Positions 1 through 15,777 of a DNA stretch of 64,000 bases are shown in pieces (positions within the stretch are counted from its first letter, which is position 1; the number at the start of each line of letters is the position of its first letter). A program made the position numbers and the translations under genes. The stretch covers positions 186,001 to 250,000 of the IMG/VR virus record IMGVR_UViG_3300029922_000001; one strand, 5' to 3'. Below the pieces are notes generated by a model. That model ran no database searches. It worked only from the letters and a program-made list of their open reading frames with translations, and had not been told where the DNA came from.

Positions 1-1
1 A

Positions 2-145: not shown

Positions 146-147
146 TT

Positions 148-429: not shown

Positions 430-445
430 ATTGTATAATTTAAGT

Positions 446-1456: not shown

Positions 1457-1538
1457 TCATCATGTGGTTGTTAAAAGGGATAAAAAACATATTCTTATTA
1501 ATGACTGGTAATCGTCCCGTCCACCAGGAGGAATTATA

Positions 1539-2060
1539 TTGGCACAACGACATATATATATTTTAGACACTTGTGTATTGCTACACGATCCTAAATCTTT
1601 ATTCAAATTCCAGAACAATGATGTTTATTTACCTTTAGCCGTCATTGATGATCTTGACGACCAAAAGGCTCGTAAAGAAGCTGTTGCTGCGTCCGCAAGA
1701 GAGGTTTTTAGACAACTAAAACCTTTGAATTTGGATCAAATAGGAGATGAAGGCATACCCCTTAATAAAGAAGGTGGTAAATTGTTTATCTATAATCATG
1801 ATAAACAAAGCGAAACCCCTAACATTACACGCATGAATTCAGATAATGCATTAATTGTCTGCTGTCTTGTGTTGCAAGCTAAATTCCCAGATCAAAAGGT
1901 AACTATTGTTACAAAAGATACAGGATTGAGAGTCAGAGCAGCAGCTTATGGTTGTCTTACTGAAAACTATCGTTCCGATCTAATTGAAGATGGAATATAT
2001 TCTGGTGTCAGATATATTACTACAACTTTGATCCCAACTGAAGCTAAGGTTGAAGTTTAA
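1539..2060 (+). CDS. PIN domain (N-terminal half of PhoH2-type PIN-PhoH protein)
   Basis: YILDTCVLLHDP, DNALI, TKDTGLRVRA PIN motifs; AGGAGG RBS upstream; same frame as the PhoH ORF. Confidence 0.9.
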   Translation: MAQRHIYILDTCVLLHDPKSLFKFQNNDVYLPLAVIDDLDDQKARKEAVAASAREVFRQLKPLNLDQIGDEGIPLNKEGGKLFIYNHDKQSETPNITRMNSDNALIVCCLVLQAKFPDQKVTIVTKDTGLRVRAAAYGCLTENYRSDLIEDGIYSGVRYITTTLIPTEAKVEV

Positions 2061-2096
2061 TCTATCAATAAAAAACTTAAAGTAAAATTAGACAAC

Positions 2097-3935
2097 TTGA
2101 ATCCTAATGAATTTGTGATTTTCCAAACTCCTAAAAAGGCAGAAGAAATTGTAACTTCTAAAGTGTATCATCATTTTGATGGATTTCTTTATGAAGTTGC
2201 GGCTACCACAGATACATTTATGGGTATTAAGCCTAAAAACATTGAACAAGAATGCGCAATGCAATTGTTAATTGATCAAAGAATCCACATGGTTTGTTTG
2301 TCAGGAAAAGCAGGTTCAGGAAAAGCACAACCTCTATATTCTCAGGTTTTAACTCCAAGTGGATACGTTGAAATGGGTGATTTAAATAAAGGAGATTTTG
2401 TAATTGGTGACGATGGTTTACCTGCTGAAGTTTTAGATATTTACCCACAGGGTAAAAAAGATATTTATAGAGTTTATTTTTCAGATGGCTCTTTTACAGA
2501 TTCTTGTGATGAACACATTTGGTCCGTAAAAGATGAGCAGGATAGAAATTATAAAAGAGAATATCGTGATTTAGAGCTTAAAGAAATAATGAAAAAAATT
2601 AAAGGTCATGATGGTAGAAAAAACTATTCCATACCATTAGTGAAACCTGTTATTTTTGATGAAAAACAGCATGTAATAGATCCTTATTTGTTTGGGGTTT
2701 TATTGGGTGATGGTTGCATGAAGTTTAATGGTGTTTATTTATCCACTTCTGATAGTGAAATTTTAGAAAGTTTTAAACACTTATTGCCAAAAAACTATTA
2801 TCTTCAACACTCTGATAAATATGATTATAGAATTAATAACATAAAAACACCTGGAGTTAAACAGGAAAACGTTATACAGCAAGAAATTATTAGACTTAAT
2901 TTAAAAGGATCTTCTTCTATTGATAAATTTATCCCTAATGAATATAAGTTCGATTCTGTAGAAAACAGAATTAAACTACTGCAAGGACTAATGGATTCTG
3001 ATGGTACTTGTGATAAATCTGGTCAGAGTATAATCTTTACAACAGTATCTTCTAGATTAGCAGAAGATATGGAGTTTATTGTCAATAGTTTGGGTGGTGT
3101 TATTAAAAGCACCAATCAATATAAAAAATACAAATATAAAGGTGAAATGAAAATTGGTAAAAAATCTCATATATTAACTATAAGCTTGCCGATAGATATC
3201 AGTCCATTCAGACTTAGTAGAAAAAATAATCTTTATATTAATAAATCTAAATATTTACCTTCAAGATATATTACCGATGTTGAATTTATTGGAAACATAG
3301 ATTGCCAATGTATTTATGTTAATAACGAAAGTCATAGATATGTTACAGATAATTTCATTGTTACTCATAATACAATTCTTGCTCTAGCTGCTGCAATGGA
3401 TCAAATAAACGCTGGTGTCTTTAACAAAATAATTGTTATTAAACCAATTGTTCCAGTTGGTGGTAAAGATATTGGTGCTTTACCTGGTGATAAGTTTGAA
3501 AAATTAGCACCTTGGCTTGGACCTATTAGCGACAACTTCGCTCAATTATGTGGTAATTTTGGTTTTCATGGTGCAGACACTTTTGAAGCAGCAGTTAAGG
3601 ATGGTTTAATTGAAGTAGAAGCAATGGCTTATATTCAGGGACGATCTATTCCTAAAACCGTTATTCTTGTAGATGAAGCACAAAACTTAACTCCTAGAGA
3701 AGCTAGAAACATTGTGGAACGTTGTGGAGAGGGTAGTAAAATCATCTTACTTGGTGACGTTTCTCAAATTGAAAACAATTATCTTGATAAAGAAAGTTGT
3801 GGTTTAGCTCATGCTATGAATGGTACTAAAACACAAGATATTTGCGGTTGTGTAACATTAAAATCAGTTACTAGAAGTCCTCTTGCTGCTATTGCTAGTG
3901 AGATTTTCTCTTCTCCCGAAGCACAAGGTAGGTAA
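2097..3935 (+). CDS. phoH: PhoH-family ATPase interrupted by an intein
   Basis: GKAGSGK|T Walker A, GALPGDKFEKLAPW, YIQGRS, ILVDEAQNLT, GDVSQI motifs. Confidence 0.92.
   Translation: MNPNEFVIFQTPKKAEEIVTSKVYHHFDGFLYEVAATTDTFMGIKPKNIEQECAMQLLIDQRIHMVCLSGKAGSGKAQPLYSQVLTPSGYVEMGDLNKGDFVIGDDGLPAEVLDIYPQGKKDIYRVYFSDGSFTDSCDEHIWSVKDEQDRNYKREYRDLELKEIMKKIKGHDGRKNYSIPLVKPVIFDEKQHVIDPYLFGVLLGDGCMKFNGVYLSTSDSEILESFKHLLPKNYYLQHSDKYDYRINNIKTPGVKQENVIQQEIIRLNLKGSSSIDKFIPNEYKFDSVENRIKLLQGLMDSDGTCDKSGQSIIFTTVSSRLAEDMEFIVNSLGGVIKSTNQYKKYKYKGEMKIGKKSHILTISLPIDISPFRLSRKNNLYINKSKYLPSRYITDVEFIGNIDCQCIYVNNESHRYVTDNFIVTHNTILALAAAMDQINAGVFNKIIVIKPIVPVGGKDIGALPGDKFEKLAPWLGPISDNFAQLCGNFGFHGADTFEAAVKDGLIEVEAMAYIQGRSIPKTVILVDEAQNLTPREARNIVERCGEGSKIILLGDVSQIENNYLDKESCGLAHAMNGTKTQDICGCVTLKSVTRSPLAAIASEIFSSPEAQGR
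2325..3371 (+). mobile_element. 349-aa intein with LAGLIDADG homing endonuclease, Ala-start (class 3 type)
   Basis: Starts AQPLYSQVLTP after P-loop Lys, ends VTHN before Thr+1; GVLLGDG and QGLMDSDG endonuclease motifs; HIW / CQC / THN triad. Confidence 0.92.
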
Positions 3936-3984
3936 TTTTTATACACTTTATAGAAAATAAATCTTTAAAGTGTATAATTGAATT

Positions 3985-6534
3985 ATGGCAATTGGTGTTA
4001 ATTGGGTAGTTTATAATAATAGCGCGAATGTGGGCACTAATCCTACAATTGTAGATTATATTAATTTTACAACAGACTCTCCCTTACCCACAAGTACTAC
4101 ATGGTCTACACCAGTGTCTTTTGGTTTTCAAGCAGTTAGTGCGAATCTTAGTAATGTCAATCTTTGGGCAAATAAAAACATTATTGATAGAAATACGTTA
4201 AAATTTATTGATATGTCTCCTAAGCTGTCTGCACCAGCAGGGTCGGTAACATTAAATTTTGGCGGTTCAGGTTCTTTGACTGGATCTTATTTTTACGCTG
4301 TTACTTTTGTGACCGCAACAGGTGAAACAAACTTGGGTGGAATTAGCAGTATTAGTCTTACAGCACAACAAGTTAATATATCAGCTATTCAGATTGATTC
4401 ATCTGGTTTAGCTATTGCAAGAAATATATATAGAACCACTGCTGGTGGATCAACTTATCATTATTTAACAACGATTGCAGACAACACAACTACTACGTTT
4501 ACAGATAACATTCCTGACTCGAATCTTCCTACAATTGATTCTACAACAATTAGTAATACCACAGGATTGAATTTTTATAAGCTTAAAGCTTTAGATTTAG
4601 ATGCACCATATATTTTTCAAGTAGATTATGCAACTTCGGCTGTATATCCATTTTTTGAAACAGGTAATGTAGATCAATATGCAACATTGGGGACTCCTGT
4701 CACAGCGGCTAGTTTTATTATTGATGGTATTACCATTTCTACATCAATAACAGGCAGTAAAATTATATTACTTAAAAATCAAGGTTTTCCAGGTGTACAC
4801 GATCCAATTACTAATGGTGTTTATGTTCTAAATCATGGTTCTGGAACGTATACACTTACCAGACACCCTTTCTTTAGTACACATTTTAATTATTTAACTG
4901 ATGTTAAGATACAAGTGAATGGTGGAACTACGAACGCTGATACGTTTTGGGCGTTATCATTCTGTGCTGTTGATCAATTTTCACCACCATCCCCAAGTGC
5001 TAGTTTTAATCCTTTAAATATGGAATTTATTGCTTCCAGTTTATCGTCTGCCGCAAATGCGATCAGTGTTTATGCGTATCAACTAAGAAAGCCAACAGAA
5101 GCTTATGTTCCATATCCTACTTGCTCTATTAATATTGAAACGAATTTAACAACTGATAATTTAAGTGATTTATATACTGTTAATCTTCCATTGCGCCAAC
5201 AAGGTGTTAATTTAAGTAATAATGATGAAATTATTCTTTCTGGTCAAACTAATACTATACAAAATGGGTCTTATTTGGTAACGAATGTTAATTCCATTAA
5301 TCAAACTTGTAATTTGTCTAGAAAAACATCTACTAGTGAATTTTTAGCACCTGGTTTTAGTTTGATTTCAGGCGAAGGTGTAAATAAAGGTTTGTCAAGT
5401 TGCTTGTTTGCTTCTTGTGTTCCTCAAGAATATTTAGTGGCTAATTTACGTTTAACTAGTGCGGAAAATGCATTAACAGGTGGCAGTTATACTCCAAATG
5501 ATTTAGTGTACAATACTGCATTAATTGGCTGGAATAGTGTTTCGGTTTGTTATCAATATGACACCACAACGGTTGCTTCTAGTTTCACAGGTCAAAATTC
5601 ATTTATATTGGTCACTTCCGAACCATATGGCGGTTATTATGTACGTGTTGGATCATCTGCTATATTTAAACAGCATAATCCTTATCCTTTATGGCACATG
5701 GTAGTGAAATATGTATACACTCAAAGTGGTGTATACACTCGCACTGATCAAGTGTCTTCATTTACTTCAGGTAGCGTTACTATACCAGTAGGCTATACAG
5801 TAAGTTACCTTAATGATAAGGTGGTAGATCCTCTAGGTAATTCTACTAATCCATTTAGGGTGTCTTTAAACACATTTAATCATTATGAAGCAGTACAATA
5901 CACTCCAGTATCAGGCGATACAATTGCACCACCATCTCCTGCTATTCCAGGCTTTCCAAATGCTTTTGTATTAACAACAACCAATCCACCAGAGTTTAAC
6001 TTCGTACAATGGGCGGCTACCGCAACACCTACAGCAAGTGAAATCAATACTACATTTACAATTTACTATGTTGAGTCATCAACATTAGATCAAAAACAAT
6101 TTTACATACCATATAGCAGCACAGTATTAAAAACTGAAGGTGCGTATTTATTTAATCCTATATATGATTTTAGATACGTAACCTATTATGATGGAACCAA
6201 CTATTATTGGTTTACATGGGAAATAAATACAATGACAGATAGCACTACTATTTGGCATCCGTTTTTTGTGTTCCGCAATGACGTTTTTGGTTTTACTTGT
6301 AAAACTTTATACCCTTCGGATTACGTTGATATATCTGATGTTTTTGGAAATCCTTTGATGTTGAATTTTTGGAATTATGCTCCTATTATTTCTGATAATG
6401 CTTTAACAAATGGCACGTTTAGCATGGACGTAAATCAAAAATCATACTCAGGAAGGTATTTAATGAGCTATCAACAGCCACCAAATGGCAATTATCACTT
6501 AACATTAAACGCAACTTTAAATAATTCTATTTAA
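3985..6534 (+). CDS. putative virion structural protein (beta-rich, Thr/Ser-rich)
   Basis: 849 aa; contains a module also present twice in the 27242 fibre gene. Confidence 0.6.
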   Translation: MAIGVNWVVYNNSANVGTNPTIVDYINFTTDSPLPTSTTWSTPVSFGFQAVSANLSNVNLWANKNIIDRNTLKFIDMSPKLSAPAGSVTLNFGGSGSLTGSYFYAVTFVTATGETNLGGISSISLTAQQVNISAIQIDSSGLAIARNIYRTTAGGSTYHYLTTIADNTTTTFTDNIPDSNLPTIDSTTISNTTGLNFYKLKALDLDAPYIFQVDYATSAVYPFFETGNVDQYATLGTPVTAASFIIDGITISTSITGSKIILLKNQGFPGVHDPITNGVYVLNHGSGTYTLTRHPFFSTHFNYLTDVKIQVNGGTTNADTFWALSFCAVDQFSPPSPSASFNPLNMEFIASSLSSAANAISVYAYQLRKPTEAYVPYPTCSINIETNLTTDNLSDLYTVNLPLRQQGVNLSNNDEIILSGQTNTIQNGSYLVTNVNSINQTCNLSRKTSTSEFLAPGFSLISGEGVNKGLSSCLFASCVPQEYLVANLRLTSAENALTGGSYTPNDLVYNTALIGWNSVSVCYQYDTTTVASSFTGQNSFILVTSEPYGGYYVRVGSSAIFKQHNPYPLWHMVVKYVYTQSGVYTRTDQVSSFTSGSVTIPVGYTVSYLNDKVVDPLGNSTNPFRVSLNTFNHYEAVQYTPVSGDTIAPPSPAIPGFPNAFVLTTTNPPEFNFVQWAATATPTASEINTTFTIYYVESSTLDQKQFYIPYSSTVLKTEGAYLFNPIYDFRYVTYYDGTNYYWFTWEINTMTDSTTIWHPFFVFRNDVFGFTCKTLYPSDYVDISDVFGNPLMLNFWNYAPIISDNALTNGTFSMDVNQKSYSGRYLMSYQQPPNGNYHLTLNATLNNSI

Positions 6535-6544
6535 TAAAAGGTAA

Positions 6545-7087
6545 ATGAATGATGGTTTGAGAATAGAAATAATAGTTGGAGGACAATGCGAACTAATGTC
6601 TAATTTGAAGGAAGAATTTTTAAATACACTGATGGAACTTGCACCAGATGTTGATGGGTTTGATGAACAAGAAAGCATCATACATCTAGCTATCTCTAAG
6701 TATAATAAAATTACATCTAATAAAAGGGTGAGCGGTAAGCTTACATCTAAAATTAAAGAATCACAAATTGTAGATTCGTTACTTTATGCTCTAGATACTT
6801 ATGAAGATAAATCTGTCATTGCTAATAACTCAACAAAAGATTTAGATCGTATATTAAGACAGGCTTATAGAAACTCAGATAATATTGGCTTTGACTTAGT
6901 GGATGACAATAAAGATTTACATGTTTTCTTTGACGAAGAAGGTGTTGATGATCGTGATGAAGACGTGGAAGATGATGAAAATTATACTATTCACGACGAA
7001 TTGCATAATTCAGACAATAATAAACTCGAAGATTGCTTTGAGAATTTAGTTGGTGGAAAACACAGAAGTAACTGGAATATAGTTTAA
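6545..7087 (+). CDS. hypothetical protein, acidic C-terminus
   Basis: 180-aa ORF, AAGG RBS. Confidence 0.7.
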   Translation: MNDGLRIEIIVGGQCELMSNLKEEFLNTLMELAPDVDGFDEQESIIHLAISKYNKITSNKRVSGKLTSKIKESQIVDSLLYALDTYEDKSVIANNSTKDLDRILRQAYRNSDNIGFDLVDDNKDLHVFFDEEGVDDRDEDVEDDENYTIHDELHNSDNNKLEDCFENLVGGKHRSNWNIV

Positions 7088-7887
7088 TGAGTTTAATTGA
7101 TTTACGTTTAGTATATGCACAGGCACAAGCGCCACAACAACCTATGCCAGAAGATCCAATGGCAGCAATGGGTGCTGACCCAATGGGAATGGGTGGAGAT
7201 CCTGCAATGGGCGGTGGAGATCCAATGGCAGCAATGGGCGGTGCTGGAGGCGCACCACCAGGTGGAATGGATATGGGAATGGGTGGAGGCGGTGAAGGAA
7301 CTGCTGAAATGGCAAACCCACAAGGTGCTGATCGTCAAGAAATTGGTGGACCACTAAATGAAGTTGCATTAGTACTACACGATTTTGATATTCAGCAAAA
7401 AGTAGAAACTACAGGTAAAGATCCAGCTAAATTAGCTCAAGAAATTTGGATAGCTTATGGTGGTGATAAAACAGGTGGAGTAGTACCAGGTAGAGTAGGA
7501 CAAAGAGATCCTGATCAAAATGTACCAGAGGATCAAATTGAAGCAGAAAGACAATCTACTGAAGATACTCGTTGGGATAGATTACCTAGAGGTTTAAATA
7601 TTGCACAAGTTATTTTAGGTTCAGATGATCCTCAAGATAAAGCAGATCCACAAGAAGCTTTTAATACACTGGAAAAGCTTTGCCAAGGTATGTTGATTAG
7701 TTCCGCACAAAGTTTAAATCCTGTTTATCAAAAAGCTTATGGTGCCCCACCCCCTGCTGCTGGTGGTGGAGGAATGCCTACTGCCAGTGTTAAATATTGG
7801 TATAAATTAGCAAGCAAGTATGATCGTGGTAATAAATTGCGTTCAGCCGATTTAGTAGATAGAATGCTTGCCGCTTATTTAGTTTAA
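7087..7887 (+). CDS. hypothetical protein with Met/Gly/Pro low-complexity N-terminus
   Basis: MGADPMGMGGDP repeats; C-terminal WYKLASKYDRGNKLRSADLVDRML motif. Confidence 0.75.
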   Translation: MSLIDLRLVYAQAQAPQQPMPEDPMAAMGADPMGMGGDPAMGGGDPMAAMGGAGGAPPGGMDMGMGGGGEGTAEMANPQGADRQEIGGPLNEVALVLHDFDIQQKVETTGKDPAKLAQEIWIAYGGDKTGGVVPGRVGQRDPDQNVPEDQIEAERQSTEDTRWDRLPRGLNIAQVILGSDDPQDKADPQEAFNTLEKLCQGMLISSAQSLNPVYQKAYGAPPPAAGGGGMPTASVKYWYKLASKYDRGNKLRSADLVDRMLAAYLV

Positions 7888-8583
7888 TTTAAAAAATTGA
7901 TCTGAATTCAAATCATTATTAGTATTGCAGTAGCCAACATTATCTTTATTGGCATATGATGGAGTCATTGTTGTTATATGAATATCAGTCCACATAATAA
8001 GTCCCTTTGCACCATTTCTTGCTTGGAATGTAGGGTTTCCAAAAGAAGAAGGAATAAAATAAGGATTGCCTATTACTTGATTTTGATTCATTAACGCGGT
8101 AGTTCCAAAAGCTATTGTTGATGATGGGTAAGATATTTCTTCTAAACCTACACCTTTATAAGTTAAGGTTATTGTTGGTAATTGAGGACTTAGATAAAAA
8201 TAGTTATAGCCATAACCATTAAATCCAATCCAGTCCATTATGTGATTATTAAATAATGGATCTTGATTAATAGCTTTTGATTTAGTATAAAGAGATAAAA
8301 TTCCTTGATTATAGTCTAATACACCATTTTGGTATTTAGCCCACCAAAATATAGAGGTATTGGTGGAGTCATCAAATATGGCAAATGGCATTGTGTTTTC
8401 ATCATAATCACTATTGTATAGTTGCCAAGCGTAACCGATTTGTTTTAAATTAGAGGTTGATTGCGTCATTAGTGCTTGTCTTTTGACGCTACTGAATACA
8501 GGAAACAAAATCGCGGCTAATAAACACAAAATTGTGATTACCGTCAGTAATTCGATCAACGTAAAAGCCTGTTTTTTGTTCAT
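7879..8583 (-). CDS. prepilin-type N-terminal cleavage/methylation domain protein (DUF1559-like)
   Basis: A|FTLIELL cleavage motif, LAAILFPVF hydrophobic helix, SNLKQIG..WQLYNSDYDE, degenerate H-X9-DG-like C-terminus (ARNG...WTDIH). Confidence 0.9.
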   Translation of the reverse strand: MNKKQAFTLIELLTVITILCLLAAILFPVFSSVKRQALMTQSTSNLKQIGYAWQLYNSDYDENTMPFAIFDDSTNTSIFWWAKYQNGVLDYNQGILSLYTKSKAINQDPLFNNHIMDWIGFNGYGYNYFYLSPQLPTITLTYKGVGLEEISYPSSTIAFGTTALMNQNQVIGNPYFIPSSFGNPTFQARNGAKGLIMWTDIHITTMTPSYANKDNVGYCNTNNDLNSDQFFKLN

Positions 8584-8722
8584 GGTGTTGTTTTCTGAGG
8601 CAATATCTGTATTATACCATGTTTTTCAGTCACTAATGAAATTTATTTTTTAGATTTTTTCTTAAAAATCAGTTAAAACAAGGCACAGTGATGGAAAAAA
8701 TCGCTATACTGACTTATAGAAC

Positions 8723-10633
8723 ATGAACGAAAACAAAGTTAATAAATATAATGCGTCTAATATTGAAATTCTAGACGGGTTAGACCCTGTAAAACGTCGC
8801 CCTGGAATGTATATTGGCGATACTGGAGAAAGAGGATTTCATCATCTTTTTAAAGAGGTTCTAGATAACAGCATTGATGAAGCTATGAATGGTTATGCTA
8901 CAAGCATACACATTAAGCTACATGATGATGAACGAACCATAGAAATTAGAGATAATGGGCGTGGAATTCCAGTTGATATTCATCCAGACCGTGGAGTTAG
9001 TGCGCTTGAAGTCATTTTAACCACTTTACATGCTGGTGGAAAATTCAATAACGATTCCTATAAGGGTGGTGCTGGTGGTTTACATGGAGTTGGTATTTCG
9101 TGTGTTAATGCACTTTCTGAATTTTTAGAGGTTGTTGTTCAACGTAAAGGTGAAGGCGTTTTTTACCAAAAGTATGAAGAAGGTATTCCCTGTGCAGATG
9201 TTCGTAAAATTAAAGAAGCCACAGCACAAGGTACTTTGGTTAAATTTAAACCAAGTGCCAAGTACTTCAAAAGCTTAACCTTTGACGAAAACAAAATTAA
9301 AGATTTTCTTCAAGAAGCCGCATTTCTTAATGCTGGATTGATTTTAACTTTTGTTAGTAAAAAACACCCAGAAGGATTAAAATTCCAATTTTCAGGTGGT
9401 ATTTCTGATTACGTTAAATCATTAATGGTTAATGTTGATGGTGTATACCCAACTGAGCCTGTAATGATTAAAGGAAAGTTGGACACTATTTCTGTTGAAG
9501 TTGCTTTTCAATATTCCAATAAGGATGGTGAGTATATCCATTCTTTTGCAAACAACATTAGAACTATAGATGGTGGTTCACACGTTTCTGGTTTAAAGAA
9601 GGCATTTACTCGTGTGGTTAACAATCAAGCATTAAAGCAAAATATTCTCAAGGAAAAAGATGCTAAATTAGCTGGTGAAGATATTAGAGACGGTATTTTA
9701 GCTGTCGTTAGTGTTCGTTTACCACAAGCACAATTTGAGGGTCAAACTAAAAACAAATTAACTACAACTGAAGCCGAAACAGCTTTAAATACTGTTGTTG
9801 GAGAGGCGTTAACTACTTTCTTTGAAAAGAATCCTTCTATTCTTAAATCTATTACAGAACGTGCTATTACTAATCAGAAGGCTAAAGAAGCAGCTAAGAA
9901 AAGTTTTGATAATGAAAAGAAAAAGGGTGTCTTAAAATATAATAGACCTGAGAAATTGAAAGATTGTATTTCTAAAAAGACAGAAGAGAGAGAATTGTTC
10001 TTAGTTGAAGGTAATTCAGCCGCTGGTAGTGCTACTGATGGTAGAGATAACTATACACAAGCTGTTTTGCCAATTAAGGGTAAGATTATTAATGCCGAAA
10101 AGACTGATTTTGAATCTCTTTTTGCTAATAAAGAAGTTCAATCACTGATCGCTTCGATTGGTACAGGAATTCAGACTGACAAAAATGATAAATTCAATAT
10201 CAATGATTGTAAGTACAATAAAATCATTATTATGACTGATGCTGATATTGATGGCGCACATATTGCTATTTTACTTTTGACTTTCTTTTGGAGATATATG
10301 AAACCTCTTGTGGAAGCTGGTAAAATATACTTTGCTCAACCACCTTTATATAAAACTACCCTCGGTAAAGATATTAATTATTTTTGGGATCAAGATTTGA
10401 TGCAAAAGCACTTAAATAAAAACCCAAAGGCATTTTTAACACGCTTTAAGGGATTGGGTGAAATGAAGTCAGGAGAGCTAGGTTCTACTACAATGGATAA
10501 GCGTTTTAGGAAGTTAATTCAGATTACAGCACTTGATGCCCAACAAGCTGACGAAACATTGAGTATAGTAATGGGTAAGGATGCTGCTCCAAGAAAAGCA
10601 ATGATTATAGATTACACAAAGGATGGAAATTAA
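8723..10633 (+). CDS. gyrB: type IIA DNA topoisomerase subunit B (GyrB/ParE family)
   Basis: VKRRPGMYIG, EVLDNSIDE, DNGRGIP, GLHGVG, LVEGNSA, MTDADIDG, RFKGLGEM. Confidence 0.95.
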   Translation: MNENKVNKYNASNIEILDGLDPVKRRPGMYIGDTGERGFHHLFKEVLDNSIDEAMNGYATSIHIKLHDDERTIEIRDNGRGIPVDIHPDRGVSALEVILTTLHAGGKFNNDSYKGGAGGLHGVGISCVNALSEFLEVVVQRKGEGVFYQKYEEGIPCADVRKIKEATAQGTLVKFKPSAKYFKSLTFDENKIKDFLQEAAFLNAGLILTFVSKKHPEGLKFQFSGGISDYVKSLMVNVDGVYPTEPVMIKGKLDTISVEVAFQYSNKDGEYIHSFANNIRTIDGGSHVSGLKKAFTRVVNNQALKQNILKEKDAKLAGEDIRDGILAVVSVRLPQAQFEGQTKNKLTTTEAETALNTVVGEALTTFFEKNPSILKSITERAITNQKAKEAAKKSFDNEKKKGVLKYNRPEKLKDCISKKTEERELFLVEGNSAAGSATDGRDNYTQAVLPIKGKIINAEKTDFESLFANKEVQSLIASIGTGIQTDKNDKFNINDCKYNKIIIMTDADIDGAHIAILLLTFFWRYMKPLVEAGKIYFAQPPLYKTTLGKDINYFWDQDLMQKHLNKNPKAFLTRFKGLGEMKSGELGSTTMDKRFRKLIQITALDAQQADETLSIVMGKDAAPRKAMIIDYTKDGN

Positions 10634-13068
10634 TGGCACGTAAAACAGCAACGGAATTATCAATACCAGTAGTAGAAAAAATAGATACATCTTCATTGCA
10701 AGATGTATTAAAAAAGAATTTTAGAATTTATGCTGATTACGTTATCTCAGATCGTGCTTTACCAGACATGAGAGACGGATTAAAGCACTCTCAGCGTCGT
10801 GTACTTATTGCTATGAAAGACTTAGGATTAGAACCAAACGGTAAGTATTCTAAGTCTGCTAAAATTTGCGGTACAACTTCGGGTGATTATCATCCTCATG
10901 GTGAAGGTGTTGTCTATCCAACTATGGTTAGAATGGCTCAGGATTGGGTTTGTAGACATTGTTTAATTGAGGGGCAGGGTAATTACGGAAATATTAATGG
11001 AGAGCCACCAGCGGCAATGAGGTACACTGAAGCAAGATTGTCACAATTTGGTAATTTACTTTTAGAAGAATTAAGTCCTACTGTTGTTGACTATATTCCC
11101 ACCTATAATGATGAAAAGAAAGAACCTGTAGTCTTACCAAGTCGATTTCCTAATCTATTGGTAAATGGTGCGTCAGGTATTGCTGTTGGTTTTTCTACTG
11201 ATATTTTGCCACATAACTATATTGAAATATCAAATTTGATTTCAGCTTATGTAAAAAACAAGAAATTAAGCGTAGATGATATAATGAAAATTATGCCAGG
11301 ACCAGATTTTCCAACTGGCGGTGTCATTCGTGGACAAGATGGTGTTAAGGAATATTACAGAACCGGCAAAGGCTCTGTCGTGTTAGAAGGTGTTTATAAT
11401 GTAAAGAAAACTCCTAAAGATACACATATTATTGAAATTACAGGAGTTCCTTATCAGGTTTCCCCTGAAGCACTTACAACTCAAATCCGTGCATTATCTG
11501 ATACAAAAGTTATTGAAACCATTCTTGTAGAAGACTACTCCAATAGAAAAGAAGAAGAAATCAATATTTCTATTATTATAGAGATACCAAAACATGCAAA
11601 TGTTGATAATACTTTGGCTCATATCCTTAAAAGCACAGATTTAAGAGTTAAAATCAGCATCAATCAAACAGTTTTAATTGATAATAAGGTGGTAGAAAAC
11701 GTTCCAGTCTTGAAGTTCATTGAAAGCTTCGTAGATTATCGTGTAGATATTCTTACGAAGAAATTCAAAAATGAACTAGGTGAAGTGAACGCCAGATTGC
11801 ATATTATTGAAGGATTGATTAGTGCTATTAAGCACATTGATGCGGTTGTTGATCTAATTAAGAAGTCAAAATCCCCAAATGAAGCTATTGCTGGTATGAT
11901 TGAGGCTAAATATGTGACAACTGATATTCAAGCGAAGGCTGTATTGGCGTTAAGATTAAGCAAATTGACCAGACTGGAGACTGATACTCTACTTAATGAA
12001 GAAAAGGAATTGAATTCTAGAATGGATTTTATTAATGATTTATTCTCTAATGATACAAATATTTATAATTTTGTAGTTAAAGAACAAAAAGAACTATCTA
12101 AGAAGTATGGCAATGACAGGAAAACTCAAATTTCCACACCTGTTGATAATATCGTCATCAAGGTTCCTATTATTGAAGAAAAATTCAAGATCAATGTTAC
12201 TTGGGATGGATTCGTTAAGAAACAGCTAGTCAATCAGGTTGATGTTAGTGATGGCGTTGTATTAGGTGAACAATTAGAGGATTATTCTCGTGATTATTCT
12301 GTAACTTCTTCAAATGCTTTACTTGTTTTCACAAATAAAGGCTTATTGTATCGTAAATTATGTGCTGATATTCCTTTGACAGCTAAGAATGCTAAAGGCG
12401 CACATATCCACAATCTAATTGATCTACCTCAAGATGAACATGTTCTTGCTCATATGTTCGTGTCTAACTTCAGAGAAGATCAGTACGTAGTCATTGGCAC
12501 AACCTCTGGATTTATCAAGAAAACCTCTATTTCTGATTATGAAACCACTCAAAAGAATAGGATATTCACTTATCAACCTCTTGAAGATGGCGATGAAGTT
12601 GTTTCCCTAGATGTAATAAACACAAATGATAGTTTAGTTTGTGTCAGTAAGGAAGGATGTTTGGTTAGATATAATGAGTCTACAATTACACCTAGACCAA
12701 GAACAGCACAAGGTGTAGTTGCTATGAAGCACATAGATAATGATTCTTTAGCGGCTGTATTTAAGGTTAATGATAAGCAGAGAATTATTTTTAATACAAG
12801 TTTAGGTTTTGTAGTTACTGTTAACGTTAAAGAACTAGAAGAAGAAACTCGTTCCGCAACACCAAAACACACAATTACGATTCAGCCAGGACGAAATGGT
12901 AATCTAACGGGAATCAAAGTGGGAGACTGTATTAAATATAAGGACGGAGAAGGTAATATTCAGATTCTGCCATTTGACGCTTGTAAAGCCACTAAGCCTA
13001 TGACTGCTAAATCTAAAACAGTTGTATTAGGTAGTAAGGTCTTAAATCCCAACGATGTCCTTCTGTAA
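10633..13068 (+). CDS. gyrA: type IIA DNA topoisomerase subunit A (GyrA/ParC family; no GyrA-box seen)
   Basis: RALPDMRDGLK, YHPHG, AAMRYTE catalytic Tyr, PDFPTGG, C-terminal beta-pinwheel repeats. Confidence 0.92.
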   Translation: MARKTATELSIPVVEKIDTSSLQDVLKKNFRIYADYVISDRALPDMRDGLKHSQRRVLIAMKDLGLEPNGKYSKSAKICGTTSGDYHPHGEGVVYPTMVRMAQDWVCRHCLIEGQGNYGNINGEPPAAMRYTEARLSQFGNLLLEELSPTVVDYIPTYNDEKKEPVVLPSRFPNLLVNGASGIAVGFSTDILPHNYIEISNLISAYVKNKKLSVDDIMKIMPGPDFPTGGVIRGQDGVKEYYRTGKGSVVLEGVYNVKKTPKDTHIIEITGVPYQVSPEALTTQIRALSDTKVIETILVEDYSNRKEEEINISIIIEIPKHANVDNTLAHILKSTDLRVKISINQTVLIDNKVVENVPVLKFIESFVDYRVDILTKKFKNELGEVNARLHIIEGLISAIKHIDAVVDLIKKSKSPNEAIAGMIEAKYVTTDIQAKAVLALRLSKLTRLETDTLLNEEKELNSRMDFINDLFSNDTNIYNFVVKEQKELSKKYGNDRKTQISTPVDNIVIKVPIIEEKFKINVTWDGFVKKQLVNQVDVSDGVVLGEQLEDYSRDYSVTSSNALLVFTNKGLLYRKLCADIPLTAKNAKGAHIHNLIDLPQDEHVLAHMFVSNFREDQYVVIGTTSGFIKKTSISDYETTQKNRIFTYQPLEDGDEVVSLDVINTNDSLVCVSKEGCLVRYNESTITPRPRTAQGVVAMKHIDNDSLAAVFKVNDKQRIIFNTSLGFVVTVNVKELEEETRSATPKHTITIQPGRNGNLTGIKVGDCIKYKDGEGNIQILPFDACKATKPMTAKSKTVVLGSKVLNPNDVLL

Positions 13069-13107
13069 AATAAAGGGGTGAGCAATGATTTTATTGAAAA
13101 ATAAGAT

Positions 13108-14079
13108 ATGCTCACCCCAGGAATGATATATAGAATAGAACCAGCTACTGGTAGTGCGTCTAAAAGTATTCGATTAAAAACCAACGACGAAGCAAATTAT
13201 AATTATTTGCCCATTAATGAATGTACCTTAAATTGGGAACAAACATTTGAAATTAAATATTTGATTCAAGGTGGACCTAGAGCAAATATTGCCGATATTG
13301 GTTTGCGTGTAATTAAGGGTAAGCTATCCATGCCTTTAAGAGTAGATATTAATGGTGATTTATTACCTGGCGTTATATCTATTTTAAGATGCGCTGAATT
13401 TCAGGTCAACAATACGTATTTGGAGATTAGTACCAATCACTTTTTATCGCCTTCAGTTGTTCCATATGTTGTTGCTGATGGCTGGGCAAGTAACAATATT
13501 GGTTTATTGAATATTACAACCTGTTTAATATCTAATTTATCAATTGAGGGACGTTCTGGTGGTAATTTAACGTTAAGCTGTGATATTAGTGGAATTATTG
13601 ATTCTAGAAATATAAGTGACGTTATCAGTTTGGATGACATAGATTTATCTGGCAGAGAATTGGTTTTTGCTGATTGTAAAGCGTATAGATATGAAGCTAG
13701 ATTACCAATTAGTATGTTTCAAGTTAACGTGAAGTCTACTATTACTGAAGATGTTTTTATCAATCCACCAGGGACACCTATAAGTATGAGAAGTGATCAA
13801 GCACAGTTCATTTCAGCTAATAATTGGGAGTCTAGTGGTAAATATGAACAGTTTGTAAAGAAAAGACTTGAAAAAAGCAGTTTTCTTCAAGGTGGTATCA
13901 TGCAAAATCAAAATATGACTTTTGAAATTGGTCCATTAAAGGTTATCTACTATACGCCTATGTTTAATGTGTCTACTCAAAACATAGATCCTAAATTGAT
14001 TAAGAGAACCGCAACTTTCACAAATATAACACCACCATTTTATATGGAGAATACGGGATTCAATTTTTTTAATTATTGA
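13108..14079 (+). CDS. hypothetical protein, possibly tail tube-like
   Basis: 323-aa beta-rich ORF; resemblance to tube proteins is an impression only. Confidence 0.45.
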   Translation: MLTPGMIYRIEPATGSASKSIRLKTNDEANYNYLPINECTLNWEQTFEIKYLIQGGPRANIADIGLRVIKGKLSMPLRVDINGDLLPGVISILRCAEFQVNNTYLEISTNHFLSPSVVPYVVADGWASNNIGLLNITTCLISNLSIEGRSGGNLTLSCDISGIIDSRNISDVISLDDIDLSGRELVFADCKAYRYEARLPISMFQVNVKSTITEDVFINPPGTPISMRSDQAQFISANNWESSGKYEQFVKKRLEKSSFLQGGIMQNQNMTFEIGPLKVIYYTPMFNVSTQNIDPKLIKRTATFTNITPPFYMENTGFNFFNY

Positions 14080-14173
14080 AACGCTGGATATATTCTGTAA
14101 AACTCTATACGTTTATTTAAATACAGGAAGGAATTCTCTTTCATATGTTTAATTTATAATTAGGGGTTTAAAT

Positions 14174-15208
14174 ATGCCAATAGGTAATAAATTTAGTAGT
14201 GCTTTCAGACAATTACAAATAAGTGGTCAAACATACCTTGCTGATGATTTTACAAGAGCAAAGAGTATGGAAGTTTCAGATGTTGACCTTATCAAAGGTA
14301 CCATTTTAACTCAGGTTTTGGACATCGGTGGTGTTGTCGAAAAGTATACTGTAGAAGTTCCTATTCTTGTTGGTGGTGGTAAGCCATTAGATGGTCGTAC
14401 CCTCTTAACGACTAAGATTAACGAAATTATAACTCAAACATTTACATTACCAATTTTAGAAAGAGGCAATATAAATGTTAGCAAAGGTGAATGTAAGGCT
14501 TCTATTACTATGATTTCTGATGGTATCATCAATCCTTCTGTTTTCTCTGTTTTAGGCGAAGTTGATCCTTCAACTTCTGTATTAAATCCTGCTAATTCTG
14601 CCAATATTCCAACGAGAGTTGCAAAATGGTACGATTTCCGCATTGGTATTGGAAGATATCAGCTTTGGCTTGAACAATTATCTTTAGATGTTAACGTTAA
14701 GACTGAAAACCTTTATTTTTTTAATGGTCCTGGCGCTTTCTCGGGCAGTACAGACTTACCAAGTGGTTCTAACACATATAATTTTGGAACTCAGTTTCCT
14801 TGGATCATGGTAAAGTCTGTTGGTATCACTGGAAGTGGTACAGCCGCTGTTGAAATTGATACTGGAAATACAGATGTTGGTTATGGGGACTACAACTCAG
14901 TTAATGAAGCGTTAAACGTATCATTAGGCGCAAACGAACAAAGTGAACTAACATTACAAAGACCAGGTAGAGTTATGTGGGAACCTACAGGCTTTACAAT
15001 GGAAATTTTCCAACCATCTGACTCTGTTCCTGCTTCAGAAAATGAAAACACTACTGGAGCATGGATACCTTTGTTTACGTTAGATGGTACCAATTCCATA
15101 ATTGACTTTAGCAAGTGCGTTATCAAAAAAGCTGATTTTCACATGAAGGCAGCAGATAAGATGACTGTTAATTTCGAATTCCATTGTTGGGTTGGACAGC
15201 CTTATTAA
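14174..15208 (+). CDS. hypothetical protein, possibly tail tube-like
   Basis: 344-aa beta-rich ORF ending TVNFEFHCW; similar size and composition to the upstream gene. Confidence 0.45.
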   Translation: MPIGNKFSSAFRQLQISGQTYLADDFTRAKSMEVSDVDLIKGTILTQVLDIGGVVEKYTVEVPILVGGGKPLDGRTLLTTKINEIITQTFTLPILERGNINVSKGECKASITMISDGIINPSVFSVLGEVDPSTSVLNPANSANIPTRVAKWYDFRIGIGRYQLWLEQLSLDVNVKTENLYFFNGPGAFSGSTDLPSGSNTYNFGTQFPWIMVKSVGITGSGTAAVEIDTGNTDVGYGDYNSVNEALNVSLGANEQSELTLQRPGRVMWEPTGFTMEIFQPSDSVPASENENTTGAWIPLFTLDGTNSIIDFSKCVIKKADFHMKAADKMTVNFEFHCWVGQPY

Positions 15209-15768
15209 TGTTCTTCTAGATCATTATCATCATTATCATCATCATACCAATCATCGTTTTCATCATCGTAAAAATCGTAATTTGAACTTGAACTATCATA
15301 TGCTTCAAATTCATCTAATGCGCTTTTTACGACACCGAGTGTTACTGTTGATAGTTTACCAAATATCAATGCATCCCCAAGACTACACTGACTAGAAAAG
15401 AGTTTGTTTCTCTTTGTACGCCAAACAACTCTGCAATACACAATGTCACCTTTAACAGATTCTACAGTAATGGAATCTATATAATTTCCACAGTTTTTCA
15501 TATATTCCATGTATAGCTGATAAATTGTAGGTAACAATGAGTTGAAATGTAATTCAGCATAGTAAAAACTTAAATAATTGGCATCTCCAACAGTTAGAGG
15601 TTGAATAAACTTTTTGGATGGAGTCATTATTAAGATGAAAGGACCATGTTCAGGATCTGTGACAATCTTAGTATCTATTATTGCAACATGTTGTAAATCT
15701 TGAATAGATTTTAGTTTACGTTCAAAGGTAAATAAATCAGCACCAATTGGTATTTTTAAATTATCCAT
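15205..15768 (-). CDS. DUF151 / bifunctional nuclease-like protein
   Basis: IQPLTVGDA, LPTIYQL, ITVESVKGDIVYCRV, SLGDALIF pattern and acidic tail match the DUF151 layout. Confidence 0.6.
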   Translation of the reverse strand: MDNLKIPIGADLFTFERKLKSIQDLQHVAIIDTKIVTDPEHGPFILIMTPSKKFIQPLTVGDANYLSFYYAELHFNSLLPTIYQLYMEYMKNCGNYIDSITVESVKGDIVYCRVVWRTKRNKLFSSQCSLGDALIFGKLSTVTLGVVKSALDEFEAYDSSSSNYDFYDDENDDWYDDDNDDNDLEEH

Positions 15769-15777
15769 AATATATAT

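What the first reader, a model, noticed from the sequence alone, without database searches (positions are those of the whole stretch)
7879..8583. Phage-encoded prepilin-type protein of the Armatimonadota/DUF1559 style
Seen: MNKKQA|FTLIELL...LAAILFPVF..VKRQA...SNLKQIG..WQLYNSDYDE, with its own promoter, on the strand opposite its neighbours. Established: the FTLIELL...ILFPVF...SNLKQIG signature is the greatly expanded prepilin/DUF1559 family typical of Armatimonadota (related forms in Planctomycetota and Verrucomicrobiota). Inference: strongest host clue in the window. A phage pilin-like protein could poison or remodel host pili for superinfection exclusion; its conserved H-X9-DG motif is degenerate (ARNG...TDIH).
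Basis: partly seen in the sequence, partly recalled or inferred. Interest (0 to 1): 0.68.

Follow-up and report, generated by a model that had tools for sequence, protein, structure and literature searches.

The report
Host-derived pilin gene in huge phage
A 441-kb phage from peat and bog water carries a trimmed, diverged copy of one particular pilin-like gene of Armatimonadota bacteria; this points to its likely host and suggests that the phage re-dresses the host's surface filaments, but the function has not been tested.

Summary
The ORF at 7879-8583 (-) is real. It encodes a 234-aa type IV prepilin-like protein with leader MNKKQA, then FTLIE, and a 50-residue helix packed on a beta-sheet (AF2 pLDDT 93). 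The window lies in a 441,498-bp virus record that has no other prepilin, no prepilin peptidase and no pilus ATPase.

Its full-length relatives (35-47% identity) are almost all Armatimonadota, mostly Fimbriimonadia. Those genomes hold 13-54 prepilin paralogues, but only one full-length counterpart each: 81 of 401 sampled genomes had a counterpart, and 77 of those had exactly one. The phage copy therefore derives from a specific, nearly single-copy orthogroup.

It belongs to a strongly supported clade of six. Five of these sit on huge-phage contigs (241-441 kb). The clade lies on a long stem, is under purifying selection (dN/dS about 0.1), lacks three peripheral host segments, and has a degenerate H-X9-DG motif.

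Best reading: a host-derived pilin mimic, processed and assembled by host machinery, that alters the filament surface. The likely benefit is superinfection exclusion, by analogy with the published P-FimU and P-PilA proteins. The mechanism is inferred only.

The host clue is good but is the only one. Identity never exceeds 47%. The phage is 34% GC against 42-71% for the bacterial loci. DnaK, TnpB and a limited spacer-type search gave nothing.

The parts
7879..8583 (-). Phage prepilin-like gene (234 aa plus TAA stop), protein P0001
   Evidence: ORF list and translation. N_methyl and TIGR02532 score above their cut-offs. AF2 model has pLDDT 93.1. A 97%-identical copy sits in sister strain L001 with dN/dS 0.13.
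8566..8583 (-). Class III signal-peptide leader MNKKQA: short, basic, with Ala at -1
   Evidence: Read from the sequence. The consensus of cellular orthologues also has Ala before FTLIELL. Cleavage itself was not tested.
8407..8565 (-). Mature N-terminus: F7 (+1), E11 (+5), the hydrophobic alpha1-N segment and the rest of the long alpha1 helix (residues 7-59)
   Evidence: DSSP on the model gives a helix at 9-59. This is the only part that matches solved pilins by sequence, such as geopilin, PilA and GspG. Columns conserved in cellular orthologues are almost all kept here.
7882..8406 (-). Globular beta-sheet domain (residues 60-234), DUF1559-type fold. It lacks three peripheral host segments, after residues 135, 166 and 213.
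   Evidence: VIA-align puts type IV pilins and pseudopilins at the top (Z 5.7-3.1). An ESM Atlas DUF1559 cluster matches at TM 0.91 over 234 residues. The deletions were mapped by alignment and by the model of the host orthologue.
7978..8019 (-). Degenerate H-X9-DG stretch, R189-N190...D200-I201-H202. R189, W198, D200 and H202 are kept; the H and the G are lost.
   Evidence: Alignments. TIGR04294 gives no hit in the phage copies and 18.7 bits (cut-off 19) in the F. ginsengisoli orthologue.
8611..8619 (-). Extended -10 promoter-like element TGGTATAAT, 28 nt upstream of the ATG
   Evidence: Pattern search found 15 copies in the window against 7.6 expected. Genome-wide, 35% of the 71 copies lie in the 10.6% of the genome that is intergenic. 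There is no -35 element, and the consensus scan was negative. This is a consensus match only.
8584..8722 (.). 139-bp divergent spacer between the pilin gene (-) and gyrB (+). No Shine-Dalgarno sequence is visible for either gene.
   Evidence: Sequence. No Rfam family was found (locus L010).
7879..7887 (.). 9-nt overlap of the convergent 3' ends of the pilin gene and the 266-aa ORF (7087..7887, +). No terminator-like hairpin.
   Evidence: A peat metatranscriptome contig (7799-7988, no mismatches) spans this junction, but its strand is unknown.

Best explanation
This is a phage-encoded mimic of one particular host pilin-like protein. An ancestor of a group of huge peat and bog-lake phages captured the gene from an Armatimonadota (Fimbriimonadia-like) bacterium, and it has been kept under selection since. 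The proposed mechanism is as follows. The gene is transcribed from its own promoter and the protein inserts into the host inner membrane through its class III signal peptide. The host prepilin peptidase cleaves it after Ala6. It then enters the host's type IV filament machinery through its conserved N-terminal helix, in place of or alongside the host orthologue. Its globular domain has lost three peripheral segments and about a fifth of the host-conserved residues, so the filament surface changes. The most likely benefit is that further phages which use this filament can no longer adsorb to the infected cell (superinfection exclusion by receptor mimicry). Shown here: homology, fold, signal motifs, orthogroup origin, phage-clade conservation, purifying selection, and absence of phage-encoded pilus machinery. 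Inferred: processing, incorporation into a filament, receptor role of the host protein, and the exclusion phenotype.
For: Prepilin motifs score above curated cut-offs. The model is confident and has a pilin fold, with TM 0.91 to a DUF1559 cluster. The phage genome has a single prepilin and no Peptidase_A24 or T2SSE ATPase. The three Fimbriimonad genomes tested each have one peptidase and 9-12 ATPase-family matches. There is one full-length counterpart per Armatimonadota genome among 13-54 paralogues, and 77 of the 81 positive genomes have exactly one. The phage clade has SH-aLRT 100 and is nested in a Fimbriimonadia-dominated group supported at 98. Relatives of the phage share a RecA-primase-RecJ module at 36-45% identity and carry the pilin at 49-51%. 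dN/dS is 0.13, and at most 0.09 in the second pair. Of 100 columns conserved in cellular orthologues, 55 are kept and 22 are changed in the phage clade, and three peripheral segments are deleted while the assembly helix stays intact. Two other huge phages carry host-like copies. Published precedent: prophage P-FimU is built into the pilus and blocks tip-binding phages, and PilA-like genes occur in prophages and virulent phages (PMC12952977).
Against: There is no experimental or expression evidence. The one RNA contig covers only the shared 3' end, and its strand is unknown. It is not known whether the host orthogroup forms a surface filament at all. The function of DUF1559/H-X9-DG proteins is unknown. 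The cellular orthologues are stand-alone genes with no pilus genes beside them. It is not known whether these phages use pili as receptors. The host is unconfirmed: identity is at most 47%, the GC gap is large, and no spacer-type match was found. P-FimU gained loops, whereas this protein lost them. Several losses may be structural swaps rather than surface changes; for example R164 and E171, on strands of the same hairpin in the model, became L and I. Ala at -1 instead of Gly might slow cleavage, although the cellular orthologues share it.
Confidence: 0.42

Rival explanations
1. Dominant-negative poison. The phage pilin enters the assembly platform through its intact N-terminal helix, but its altered globular domain stalls polymerisation. 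This shuts down the host's pili or pseudopili, and with them motility, secretion or DNA uptake. Exclusion of pilus-dependent phages would then follow from loss of the filament rather than from a re-dressed filament.
For: The assembly helix is conserved, while 22 of 100 host-conserved columns and three segments are lost. The H-X9-DG motif is degenerate in every member of the clade. PMC12952977 notes that over-expressing FimU alone disrupts pilus assembly, and that truncated PilA-like phage proteins might inhibit assembly.
Against: The whole globular fold is retained with high model confidence, and purifying selection acts over the full length. A blocker would need far less than this, for example the 60-residue phage PilA fragments cited. 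The invariant core residues W198, D200, H202, R189 and the GYGYNY block are kept.
Confidence: 0.2
2. Auxiliary 'virocell' gene. The phage copy simply replaces the host protein after host transcription is shut off, and so keeps up whatever this orthogroup does during a long huge-phage infection (adhesion, uptake or secretion).
For: It is a full-length orthologue of a conserved host gene. The phage also carries many other host-type housekeeping genes, including DnaK, DnaJ-domain protein, gyrase, PhoH, tRNAs and tmRNA. Two other huge phages carry nearly host-like copies with an intact H-X9-DG.
Against: The window's clade sits on a very long stem (1.17 substitutions per site). It has replaced residues that are 90-100% conserved in the 80 cellular orthologues (R116, R164, E171, R211, T122) and has deleted a segment holding an F at 99% and a G at 95%. 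That is not expected if the original function were retained.
Confidence: 0.18
3. Not a filament subunit. Like many of the dozens of DUF1559-type prepilins, the protein may stay anchored in the membrane or periplasm as a binding or sensing module. The phage version would then interfere with or exploit that unknown process, for example envelope signalling or nutrient capture.
For: The function of the family is unknown. The cellular orthologues lie away from pilus genes. There is no D-region disulfide: the globular domain has a single Cys. Z-scores to solved pilins are only modest.
Against: The leader, F+1, E+5 and hydrophobic helix are all conserved, and these features are tied to prepilin-peptidase processing and filament assembly. 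All top structural matches are pilins or pseudopilins.
Confidence: 0.15
4. Decaying passenger gene or mis-assembly: a fragment of host DNA on a viral contig, with no function for the phage.
For: Only the general fact that metagenomic viral contigs can be chimeric.
Against: The gene's GC content is 31%, matching the phage at 34% and not the bacterial loci at 42-71%. The same gene sits in the same place in an independent 295-kb scaffold and is covered by contigs from several peat runs. Homologues occur in three further phage lineages. dN/dS is about 0.1.
Confidence: 0.02

Closest known systems
Phage-encoded pilin mimics: P-FimU of Pseudomonas F10-like prophages, and the PilA-like proteins of Xylella prophages and some virulent phages (Sztanko et al., Cell Rep 2026, PMC12952977)
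   Same: A phage carries a diverged homologue of a host type IV filament subunit. The assembly-competent N-terminus is kept and the outer parts differ. About 50% identity between phage and host forms was reported for P-PilA. The virulent phages cited there also lack pilus machinery of their own.
   Different: This one comes from a different pilin family (DUF1559/H-X9-DG type, 234 aa) and a different host phylum. It sits on a 441-kb, probably virulent phage. Its loops are deleted rather than added. Incorporation into a pilus and anti-phage activity were shown for P-FimU and are untested here. No sequence match was found in 50,697 GenBank phage records, and no significant match (E at most 0.001) in BFVD.
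The near single-copy Armatimonadota orthogroup, e.g. Fimbriimonas ginsengisoli Gsoil 348 protein P0053 (CP007139.1, locus L172 9001-9774)
   Same: Full-length alignment at 35-47% identity, the same predicted fold and order of secondary structure, and the same Ala-Phe cleavage context.
   Different: The phage form is about 20 residues shorter and lacks three peripheral elements. It has changed 22 of the 100 columns conserved in the 80 cellular orthologues and has lost the H and the G of H-X9-DG. The cellular genes are 42-71% GC and stand alone behind 360-550-bp upstream gaps.
DUF1559 / SBP_bac_10 (PF07596) with the H-X9-DG C-terminal domain (TIGR04294), of Planctomycetota, Verrucomicrobiota and Lentisphaerota
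   Same: Prepilin leader followed by the same globular fold (TM 0.91, rmsd 2.2 over 234 residues). The family is massively paralogous, with 68 copies in Planctopirus limnophila (PMC10632474).
   Different: Both curated HMMs score below threshold. The family has no known function, so membership explains nothing about mechanism.
Solved type IV pilins and pseudopilins: Thermus thermophilus PilA4 (6xxd), V. cholerae EpsG (4lw9), Klebsiella PulG (5wda)
   Same: A long N-terminal helix packed on an antiparallel sheet. Sequence similarity exists in the first 55 or so mature residues.
   Different: Z is only 5.7-3.8 and the globular domain is about twice as large. TIGR01710 (GspG) scores 31.8 bits against a cut-off of 88.85. 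There is no disulfide-bonded D-region.
Phage proteins that switch off type IV pili through the motor: Tip of D3112 and Aqs1 of DMS3 (named from my own knowledge; the field is reviewed in PMC11436027 and PMC11656802, which one search listed but I did not read)
   Same: The same proposed benefit, namely exclusion of pilus-dependent phages.
   Different: Those are small cytoplasmic proteins that bind the PilB ATPase. They are not pilin homologues and carry no signal peptide.

Membership tests
Type IV pilin-like proteins (class III signal peptide; PF07963 / TIGR02532) | Short basic leader, then [G/A]-F-x-x-x-E and about 20 hydrophobic residues, scoring above the curated HMM cut-offs | tested here: met
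   PF07963 scores 29.3 bits (cut-off 21.2) and TIGR02532 scores 25.7 bits (cut-off 16.3). F7, E11 and P28 are invariant in 112 relatives.
Type IV pilin-like proteins (class III signal peptide; PF07963 / TIGR02532) | Gly at position -1 of the cleavage site | tested here: inconclusive
   The phage protein has Ala, as does the consensus of the cellular orthologues; a few have Gly. From my own knowledge, Ala is the one substitution reported as tolerated by the Pseudomonas peptidase.
Type IV pilin-like proteins (class III signal peptide; PF07963 / TIGR02532) | Pilin fold: an extended alpha1 helix packed on an antiparallel beta-sheet | tested here: met
   AF2 model has pLDDT 93.1, a helix at 9-59 and a sheet. 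The 21 best VIA-align rows are all pilins or pseudopilins, though Z is only 5.7-3.1. Foldseek found nothing significant in the PDB.
Type IV pilin-like proteins (class III signal peptide; PF07963 / TIGR02532) | Cleavage and N-methylation by a prepilin peptidase, and polymerisation by a type IV filament machine | not testable with these tools
   The phage has no peptidase or ATPase. Candidate host genomes have both. This needs biochemistry.
DUF1559 / SBP_bac_10 (PF07596) | Pfam HMM at or above the gathering score (23.3 bits) | tested here: not met
   14.1 bits, residues 40-76 only. Many cellular orthologues carry a precomputed PF07596 hit, but it is often faint.
DUF1559 / SBP_bac_10 (PF07596) | The same three-dimensional fold as family members | tested here: met
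   An ESM Atlas cluster in which 100% of members carry PF07596 matches at TM 0.91 by query, rmsd 2.2, over all 234 residues.
H-X9-DG domain proteins (TIGR04294) | His, nine residues, then Asp-Gly near the C-terminus; HMM at or above 19 bits | tested here: not met
   No hit in the phage copies. N190 replaces the His and I201 replaces the Gly; the other clade members have R or V at the His position and L at the Gly position. The F. ginsengisoli orthologue scores 18.7 bits.
Near single-copy Armatimonadota pilin orthogroup | A unique full-length best match per genome, clearly separated from the paralogues | tested here: met
   One match per genome at E 1e-42 to 1e-55, against the next best at 1e-17. 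81 of 401 genomes are positive, 77 of them with exactly one match.
Near single-copy Armatimonadota pilin orthogroup | Branches inside the orthogroup in a tree | tested here: met
   The phage clade is nested within a Fimbriimonadia-dominated group (SH-aLRT 98), on a stem of 1.17 substitutions per site. The tree is from a quick search rooted at the midpoint.
Near single-copy Armatimonadota pilin orthogroup | Keeps the residues and segments conserved across the orthogroup | tested here: not met
   55 of 100 conserved columns are kept, 22 are changed in at least five of the six clade members, and three segments are deleted.
Phage-encoded pilin mimics (P-FimU / P-PilA type) | A phage-borne homologue of a host filament subunit, with a conserved assembly helix and altered outer parts | tested here: met
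   Here the alteration is by deletion, whereas P-FimU gained loops.
Phage-encoded pilin mimics (P-FimU / P-PilA type) | Incorporated into the host pilus, and blocks adsorption of pilus-binding phages | not testable with these tools
   No cultured host-phage pair exists. Complex prediction was not run because a pass between two pilin helices would not discriminate.
Type II secretion major pseudopilin GspG (TIGR01710) | Equivalog HMM at or above 88.85 bits | tested here: not met
   31.8 bits, N-terminal 55 residues only.

The most novel reading that the evidence does not exclude
The near single-copy orthogroup is the main subunit, or a tip subunit, of the surface fimbriae of Fimbriimonadia, and it is the receptor used by a whole group of huge peat and bog-lake phages. 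The phage-borne copies are trimmed receptor mimics that make infected cells invisible to competing phages. If so, this would give the first function for a member of the enigmatic DUF1559/H-X9-DG prepilin expansion. It would also give the first defined virus-host interface for the phylum Armatimonadota, and would extend pilin-mimic exclusion from temperate Pseudomonas phages to virulent huge phages.
Probability: 0.22. Interest if true: 0.72.

Novelty: new member of a known kind. Interest (0 to 1): 0.5.

Why it matters
I know of no cultured phage of Armatimonadota, and two literature searches here turned up none. Most huge phages from peat and humic lakes have no host assignment. This gene is a specific and phylogenetically informative link between a group of 241-441-kb phages and Fimbriimonadia-type bacteria. 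It also singles out one conserved, near single-copy protein from the dozens of DUF1559-type prepilins whose function nobody knows. Phages have captured it, perhaps more than once (two other huge phages carry host-like copies), and kept it, which argues that the protein is exposed and matters at the cell surface. This makes a testable entry point, since Fimbriimonas ginsengisoli and Chthonomonas calidirosea are cultured. If the mimicry model holds, the recently described pilin-replacement defence would be widespread and old rather than a Pseudomonas curiosity.

Tried and rejected
1. Host evidence independent of the pilin gave nothing.
- TnpB (G000 24503-25627): nearest relatives are 78% identical, unnamed and mostly on long phage-like contigs. 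The best named hit is a Melioribacteraceae MAG at 59%.
- DnaK: the nearest sequences are unnamed metagenomic proteins (80%, then 57-50% identity). Named cellular hits are about 48% and come from Clostridia and Thermoplasmata.
- BLAST of window 1-20000 against 401 Armatimonadota genomes returned only conserved dnaK, gyrase and pilin-helix similarity. There was no short, near-identical, spacer-like hit. Only 20 kb of the 441 kb was tested.
- Shine-Dalgarno use is low in both phage and candidate hosts (25% and 20% of starts). Start calls in GC-rich DNA are unreliable, so I treat this as uninformative.

2. The low-GC, 1.5-Mb genomes of the phylum that share the most DNA similarity in dnaK (G379, G389) lack the orthologue. 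They are not obvious hosts.

3. No Rfam family was found in the long upstream regions of the cellular orthologues or around the phage gene.

4. The claim of several independent captures is not proven. The tree places the L092 and L093 copies apart from the window's clade. However, an AU test does not reject a single clade of all eight copies that I labelled as phage-borne (p = 0.35). Two of those eight, P0003 and the clade member P0122's kin aside, rest on clade membership or context; P0003 has no genomic context at all.

5. Phage hallmark genes were not found with Pfam Terminase_6C, Phage_sheath_1 or phrog_15; the phrog_15 matches were intein-like only. The viral nature therefore rests on the IMG/VR and CheckV record, the gene content and the PHROG hits.

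6. Expression could not be established. One metatranscriptome contig touches the last 110 nt of the gene together with the converging neighbour, and its strand is unknown.

7. Complex prediction was not used, because hydrophobic pilin helices would pair regardless. No verdict is claimed.

8. P0003 has no genomic context (a 1-kb contig with no DNA served). Its label as phage-borne rests on clade membership only.

9. No alternative genetic code was used. Read laying was given 4,001 letters.
Full report
**Observation**

The ORF at 7879..8583 on the minus strand is real. It has an ATG start and a TAA stop and encodes 234 aa (P0001).

Both neighbours lie on the plus strand. The 266-aa ORF at 7087..7887 converges on the pilin gene and overlaps its 3' end by 9 nt. 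gyrB (8723..10633) diverges from it across a 139-bp spacer.

The prepilin signature is statistically solid. Pfam N_methyl scores 29.3 bits against a cut-off of 21.2, and TIGR02532 scores 25.7 against 16.3. The leader is MNKKQA, followed by F(+1)TLIE(+5) and a hydrophobic helix.

- The promoter is only a perfect extended -10 (TGGTATAAT, 8611-8619, minus strand, 28 nt before the ATG) with no -35. The two-hexamer scan found nothing in the spacer. However, 35% of the 71 genomic copies of this nonamer lie in the 10.6% of the genome that is intergenic.
- Pfam DUF1559 is hit below threshold: 14.1 against 23.3 bits.

**Where the gene sits**

The window is G000:C1:186001-250000 of a 441,498-bp IMG/VR virus record that CheckV rates as complete. 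An identical TnpB and an identical DnaK occur on a 521,591-bp contig, so the genome may be larger.

The genome is 34% GC and the pilin gene is 31% GC. It carries 23 tRNAs, a tmRNA and two tRNAs with anticodon CTA. It also has gyrase, a DnaK-like Hsp70, DnaJ-domain proteins, PIN-PhoH, RecA, primase and RecJ, plus many PHROG-only genes.

The genome has exactly one prepilin gene, no prepilin peptidase (Peptidase_A24) and no T2SSE-type ATPase. Any processing or assembly would therefore have to be done by the host.

**What the protein is**

A search of 5.8 billion proteins gave thousands of hits. After a few close ones come full-length matches at about 40% identity, and every named one is Fimbriimonadaceae, Fimbriimonas or Armatimonadetes. 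An exhaustive HMMER scan found 94,302 representative clusters at E <= 1e-3, but only 15 at E <= 1e-30.

In one genome per species (GTDB), 74 of the 80 best loci carry an Armatimonadota label. One more is Abditibacteriota and three are unclassified. The remaining two (Methanoregulaceae, Solirubrobacterales) pair with Fimbriimonadaceae sequences in the tree; one is nearly identical to its partner, so both are probably mis-binned. This scan used peptide patterns taken from my alignment and is therefore biased. The unbiased search agrees with it.

AlphaFold2 with 112 relatives gives a confident model (pLDDT 93.1, pTM 0.86). It has a helix at residues 9-59 packed on a beta-sheet.
- Foldseek finds nothing significant in the PDB.
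- The exhaustive aligner puts 21 type IV pilins or pseudopilins at the top (Thermus PilA4 Z 5.7, EpsG 4.4, PulG 3.8). These scores are modest.
- By sequence, only the N-terminal helix matches solved pilins.
- In the ESM Atlas the whole model superposes on a Planctomycetota cluster in which every member carries PF07596 (TM 0.91, rmsd 2.2).

So the fold is the DUF1559 fold, although the curated HMM is not reached.

**A specific orthogroup, not a random paralogue**

Three Fimbriimonad genomes of 3.3, 3.1 and 2.2 Mb hold 54, 38 and 13 prepilin matches at E <= 1e-10. Each holds only one full-length counterpart (E 1e-42 to 1e-55, 41-47% identity), and the next best match is near 1e-17.

Across 401 sampled genomes of the phylum, 81 have a match at E <= 1e-35, and 77 of those have exactly one. 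Identity never exceeds 47%.

The cellular orthologues examined (F. ginsengisoli and two long contigs) are stand-alone genes behind 360-550-bp upstream gaps. Their neighbourhoods are unrelated to one another and contain no pilus genes. No Rfam element lies upstream. The same genomes each have one prepilin peptidase and 9-12 T2SSE-family matches.

**The phage clade**

- A 295-kb scaffold (L001) is a sister strain. Its proteins are mostly 97-100% identical, and the pilin is in the same place at 97%.
- Three more lineages carry copies at 49-52% identity: L002/L003 (265 and 241 kb), L006 (41 kb) and L178/L179 (53 and 25 kb). There the context is DnaJ, a 48-aa membrane ORF, the pilin, then ClpP.
- L002 and L006 share the RecA-primase-RecJ module with the window's genome at 36-45% identity. 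They are therefore distant kin, and the pilin is at least as conserved as the core replication genes.
- In the tree, the six clade members form one group (SH-aLRT 100) on a stem of 1.17 substitutions per site. The group is nested in a Fimbriimonadia-dominated set supported at 98.
- Selection is purifying. Between the sister strains there are 11 synonymous and 6 non-synonymous changes (dN/dS 0.13). Between L002 and L006, dN is 0.20 with saturated dS.
- Two other huge phages (379 and 479 kb, 42-44% GC) carry copies that still look like the host protein, with the H-X9-DG and the long C-terminal segment present. One sits in tandem with a second prepilin, downstream of GroEL.
- These two copies fall elsewhere in the tree, but an AU test does not reject a single origin for all eight copies that I labelled as phage-borne (p = 0.35). 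One of the eight (P0003) has no genomic context.
- No relative exists in 50,697 GenBank phage records, and BFVD gave no significant match.

**What changed in the phage copy**

Of 100 alignment columns that are at least 85% conserved in the 80 cellular orthologues, the clade keeps 55 in at least five of six members. These include almost the entire N-terminal helix, the WW and GYGYNY blocks, and R189, W198, D200 and H202.

It changes 22 columns in at least five of six members. These include R116, R164, E171, R211 and T122, which are 90-100% conserved in cells. R164 and E171 lie on the two strands of one hairpin in the model (157-166 and 169-172). Their change to L and I may be a coupled structural swap; that is my inference.

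Three segments are missing, after residues 135, 166 and 213. In the model of the F. ginsengisoli orthologue (pLDDT 95.0) these correspond to:
- a small extra hairpin,
- a longer hairpin loop,
- a run of about 15 residues of short turns near the C-terminus.

The H and the G of H-X9-DG are replaced in every clade member, and TIGR04294 gives no hit.

**Mechanism**

The pattern is an intact processing site and assembly helix, a retained core fold, trimmed periphery and strong constraint. It is what a subunit that must still be accepted by the host machinery while presenting a different surface would look like.

A direct precedent exists. Prophage P-FimU proteins of Pseudomonas are built into the pilus tip, leave motility intact and block phages that bind there. 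The same paper reports PilA-like genes in Xylella prophages and in virulent phages. It proposes pilin replacement as a general exclusion strategy, and notes that virulent phages also benefit from exclusion (PMC12952977).

I therefore rank receptor mimicry first (0.42). The rivals are:
- a dominant-negative poison (0.20),
- a plain functional substitute (0.18),
- a non-filament role (0.15),
- a non-functional passenger (0.02).

Every step after translation is inferred. The only expression hint is a 190-nt peat metatranscriptome contig (7799-7988, no mismatches). It covers the overlapping 3' ends of two converging genes, and its strand is unknown.

**Host clue**

The pilin is the only taxon-specific signal I found. 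TnpB, DnaK and a 20-kb DNA search against 401 Armatimonadota genomes gave no host information.

The GC gap is large: 34% for the phage against 42-71% for the bacterial loci. From my own knowledge, jumbo phages with their own replication genes can differ from their hosts by as much (phiKZ and Pseudomonas aeruginosa).

The habitat fits. The phage occurs in many peat metagenomes and in humic-lake assemblies. I put the probability of an Armatimonadota host at about 0.6.

**Novelty and verdict**

Phage-encoded pilin homologues are a known kind. This is a new member from an unstudied pilin family, an unstudied host phylum and a huge-phage lineage.

The function of DUF1559/H-X9-DG proteins is unknown in the literature I could search. 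No paper linking huge phages to such prepilins was found.

Interest is moderate. The finding is solid as annotation and as a host lead. It singles out one conserved host protein for experiment, but the mechanism is only an analogy.

Noticed in passing
window 1539-3935 (+): The PIN-PhoH gene is interrupted. A PIN ORF (1539-2060) is followed by a 612-aa ORF (2097-3935) that holds a LAGLIDADG domain (aa 292-348), an intein-like stretch that PHROGs labels 'terminase', and then PhoH (aa 425-602). Sister strain L001 has one uninterrupted PIN-PhoH gene of 436-449 aa. This looks like a presence/absence polymorphism of an intein or homing-endonuclease insertion.
   Followed up: partly
window 21757-26955 and 27242-32464 (+): Two giant ORFs of 1732 and 1740 aa have about 41% GC in a 33% GC background and no Pfam domain. 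The C-terminus of the first, and of the 822-aa ORF at 19150-21618, share phrog_17490 and phrog_28536 (unknown function). They may be virion or fibre proteins, or a more recent acquisition.
   Followed up: partly
G000:C1 172128-172200 and 353602-353673 (outside the window); window 53271-53344 (-): The phage genome encodes 23 tRNAs, a tmRNA (G000 293574-293927) and two tRNAs with anticodon CTA, which would read the amber codon TAG. The window itself holds tRNA-Ile(TAT). The window's ORFs are open under the standard code, so I named no recoding. Whether late genes elsewhere use TAG as a sense codon was not examined.
   Followed up: no
L002 ~9855-10001, L006 9900-10046, L178 7858-8004: In the DnaJ/ClpP-type relatives, a conserved 48-aa ORF with a C-terminal hydrophobic helix ends in an ATGA overlap with the pilin start codon, which suggests translational coupling. 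No homologue was found in the window's genome by tblastn.
   Followed up: partly
L092 5319-8759; L093 7491-8771: Another huge phage (379 kb) has GroEL followed by two tandem prepilin genes of 291 and 253 aa. In a 479-kb phage the pilin is in frame with a 155-residue multi-membrane-span N-terminal extension, which is either a fusion or an unmarked upstream gene. Chaperone genes (DnaJ-domain, GroEL, Hsp70) recur near phage pilins, and this may be coincidence.
   Followed up: no
G000:C1 24503-25627 and 177134-178255 (outside the window); L001 17147-18268; L006 6765-7934: IS605-type TnpB genes sit in the phage genome. Copies in related phages are 76-87% identical, and many 72-78% identical copies lie on other long contigs. 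This suggests a TnpB element circulating within this phage group.
   Followed up: partly
window 16603-19060 (-): A DnaK-like Hsp70 (594 aa) has no close cellular relative. The nearest sequences are metagenomic at 80% and then 57%, and named cellular hits are about 48%. It is followed directly by an HNH/NUMOD3 homing-endonuclease-like ORF (18377-19060).
   Followed up: partly
window 3985-6534 (+) compared with L001 12038-14587: Synonymous divergence between the two sister strains is uneven: gyrB 0.018, the pilin 0.081, and the 849-aa Ser/Thr/Asn-rich ORF 0.163. The block just upstream of the pilin is therefore a local hot spot of variation, as might be expected for host-interaction genes.
   Followed up: partly
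G000:C1 80791-81024 (outside the window): A second intein-like match to phrog_15 lies inside a 1874-aa open frame. The phage seems to carry several intein or homing-endonuclease insertions.
   Followed up: no
window 8545-8583, runs X3 and X6: Contigs from peat runs match only the roughly 35 nt that encode FTLIELL and continue into unlike, GC-rich sequence. They are most simply explained as prepilin genes of other organisms in the same samples, not as variants of the phage.
   Followed up: no
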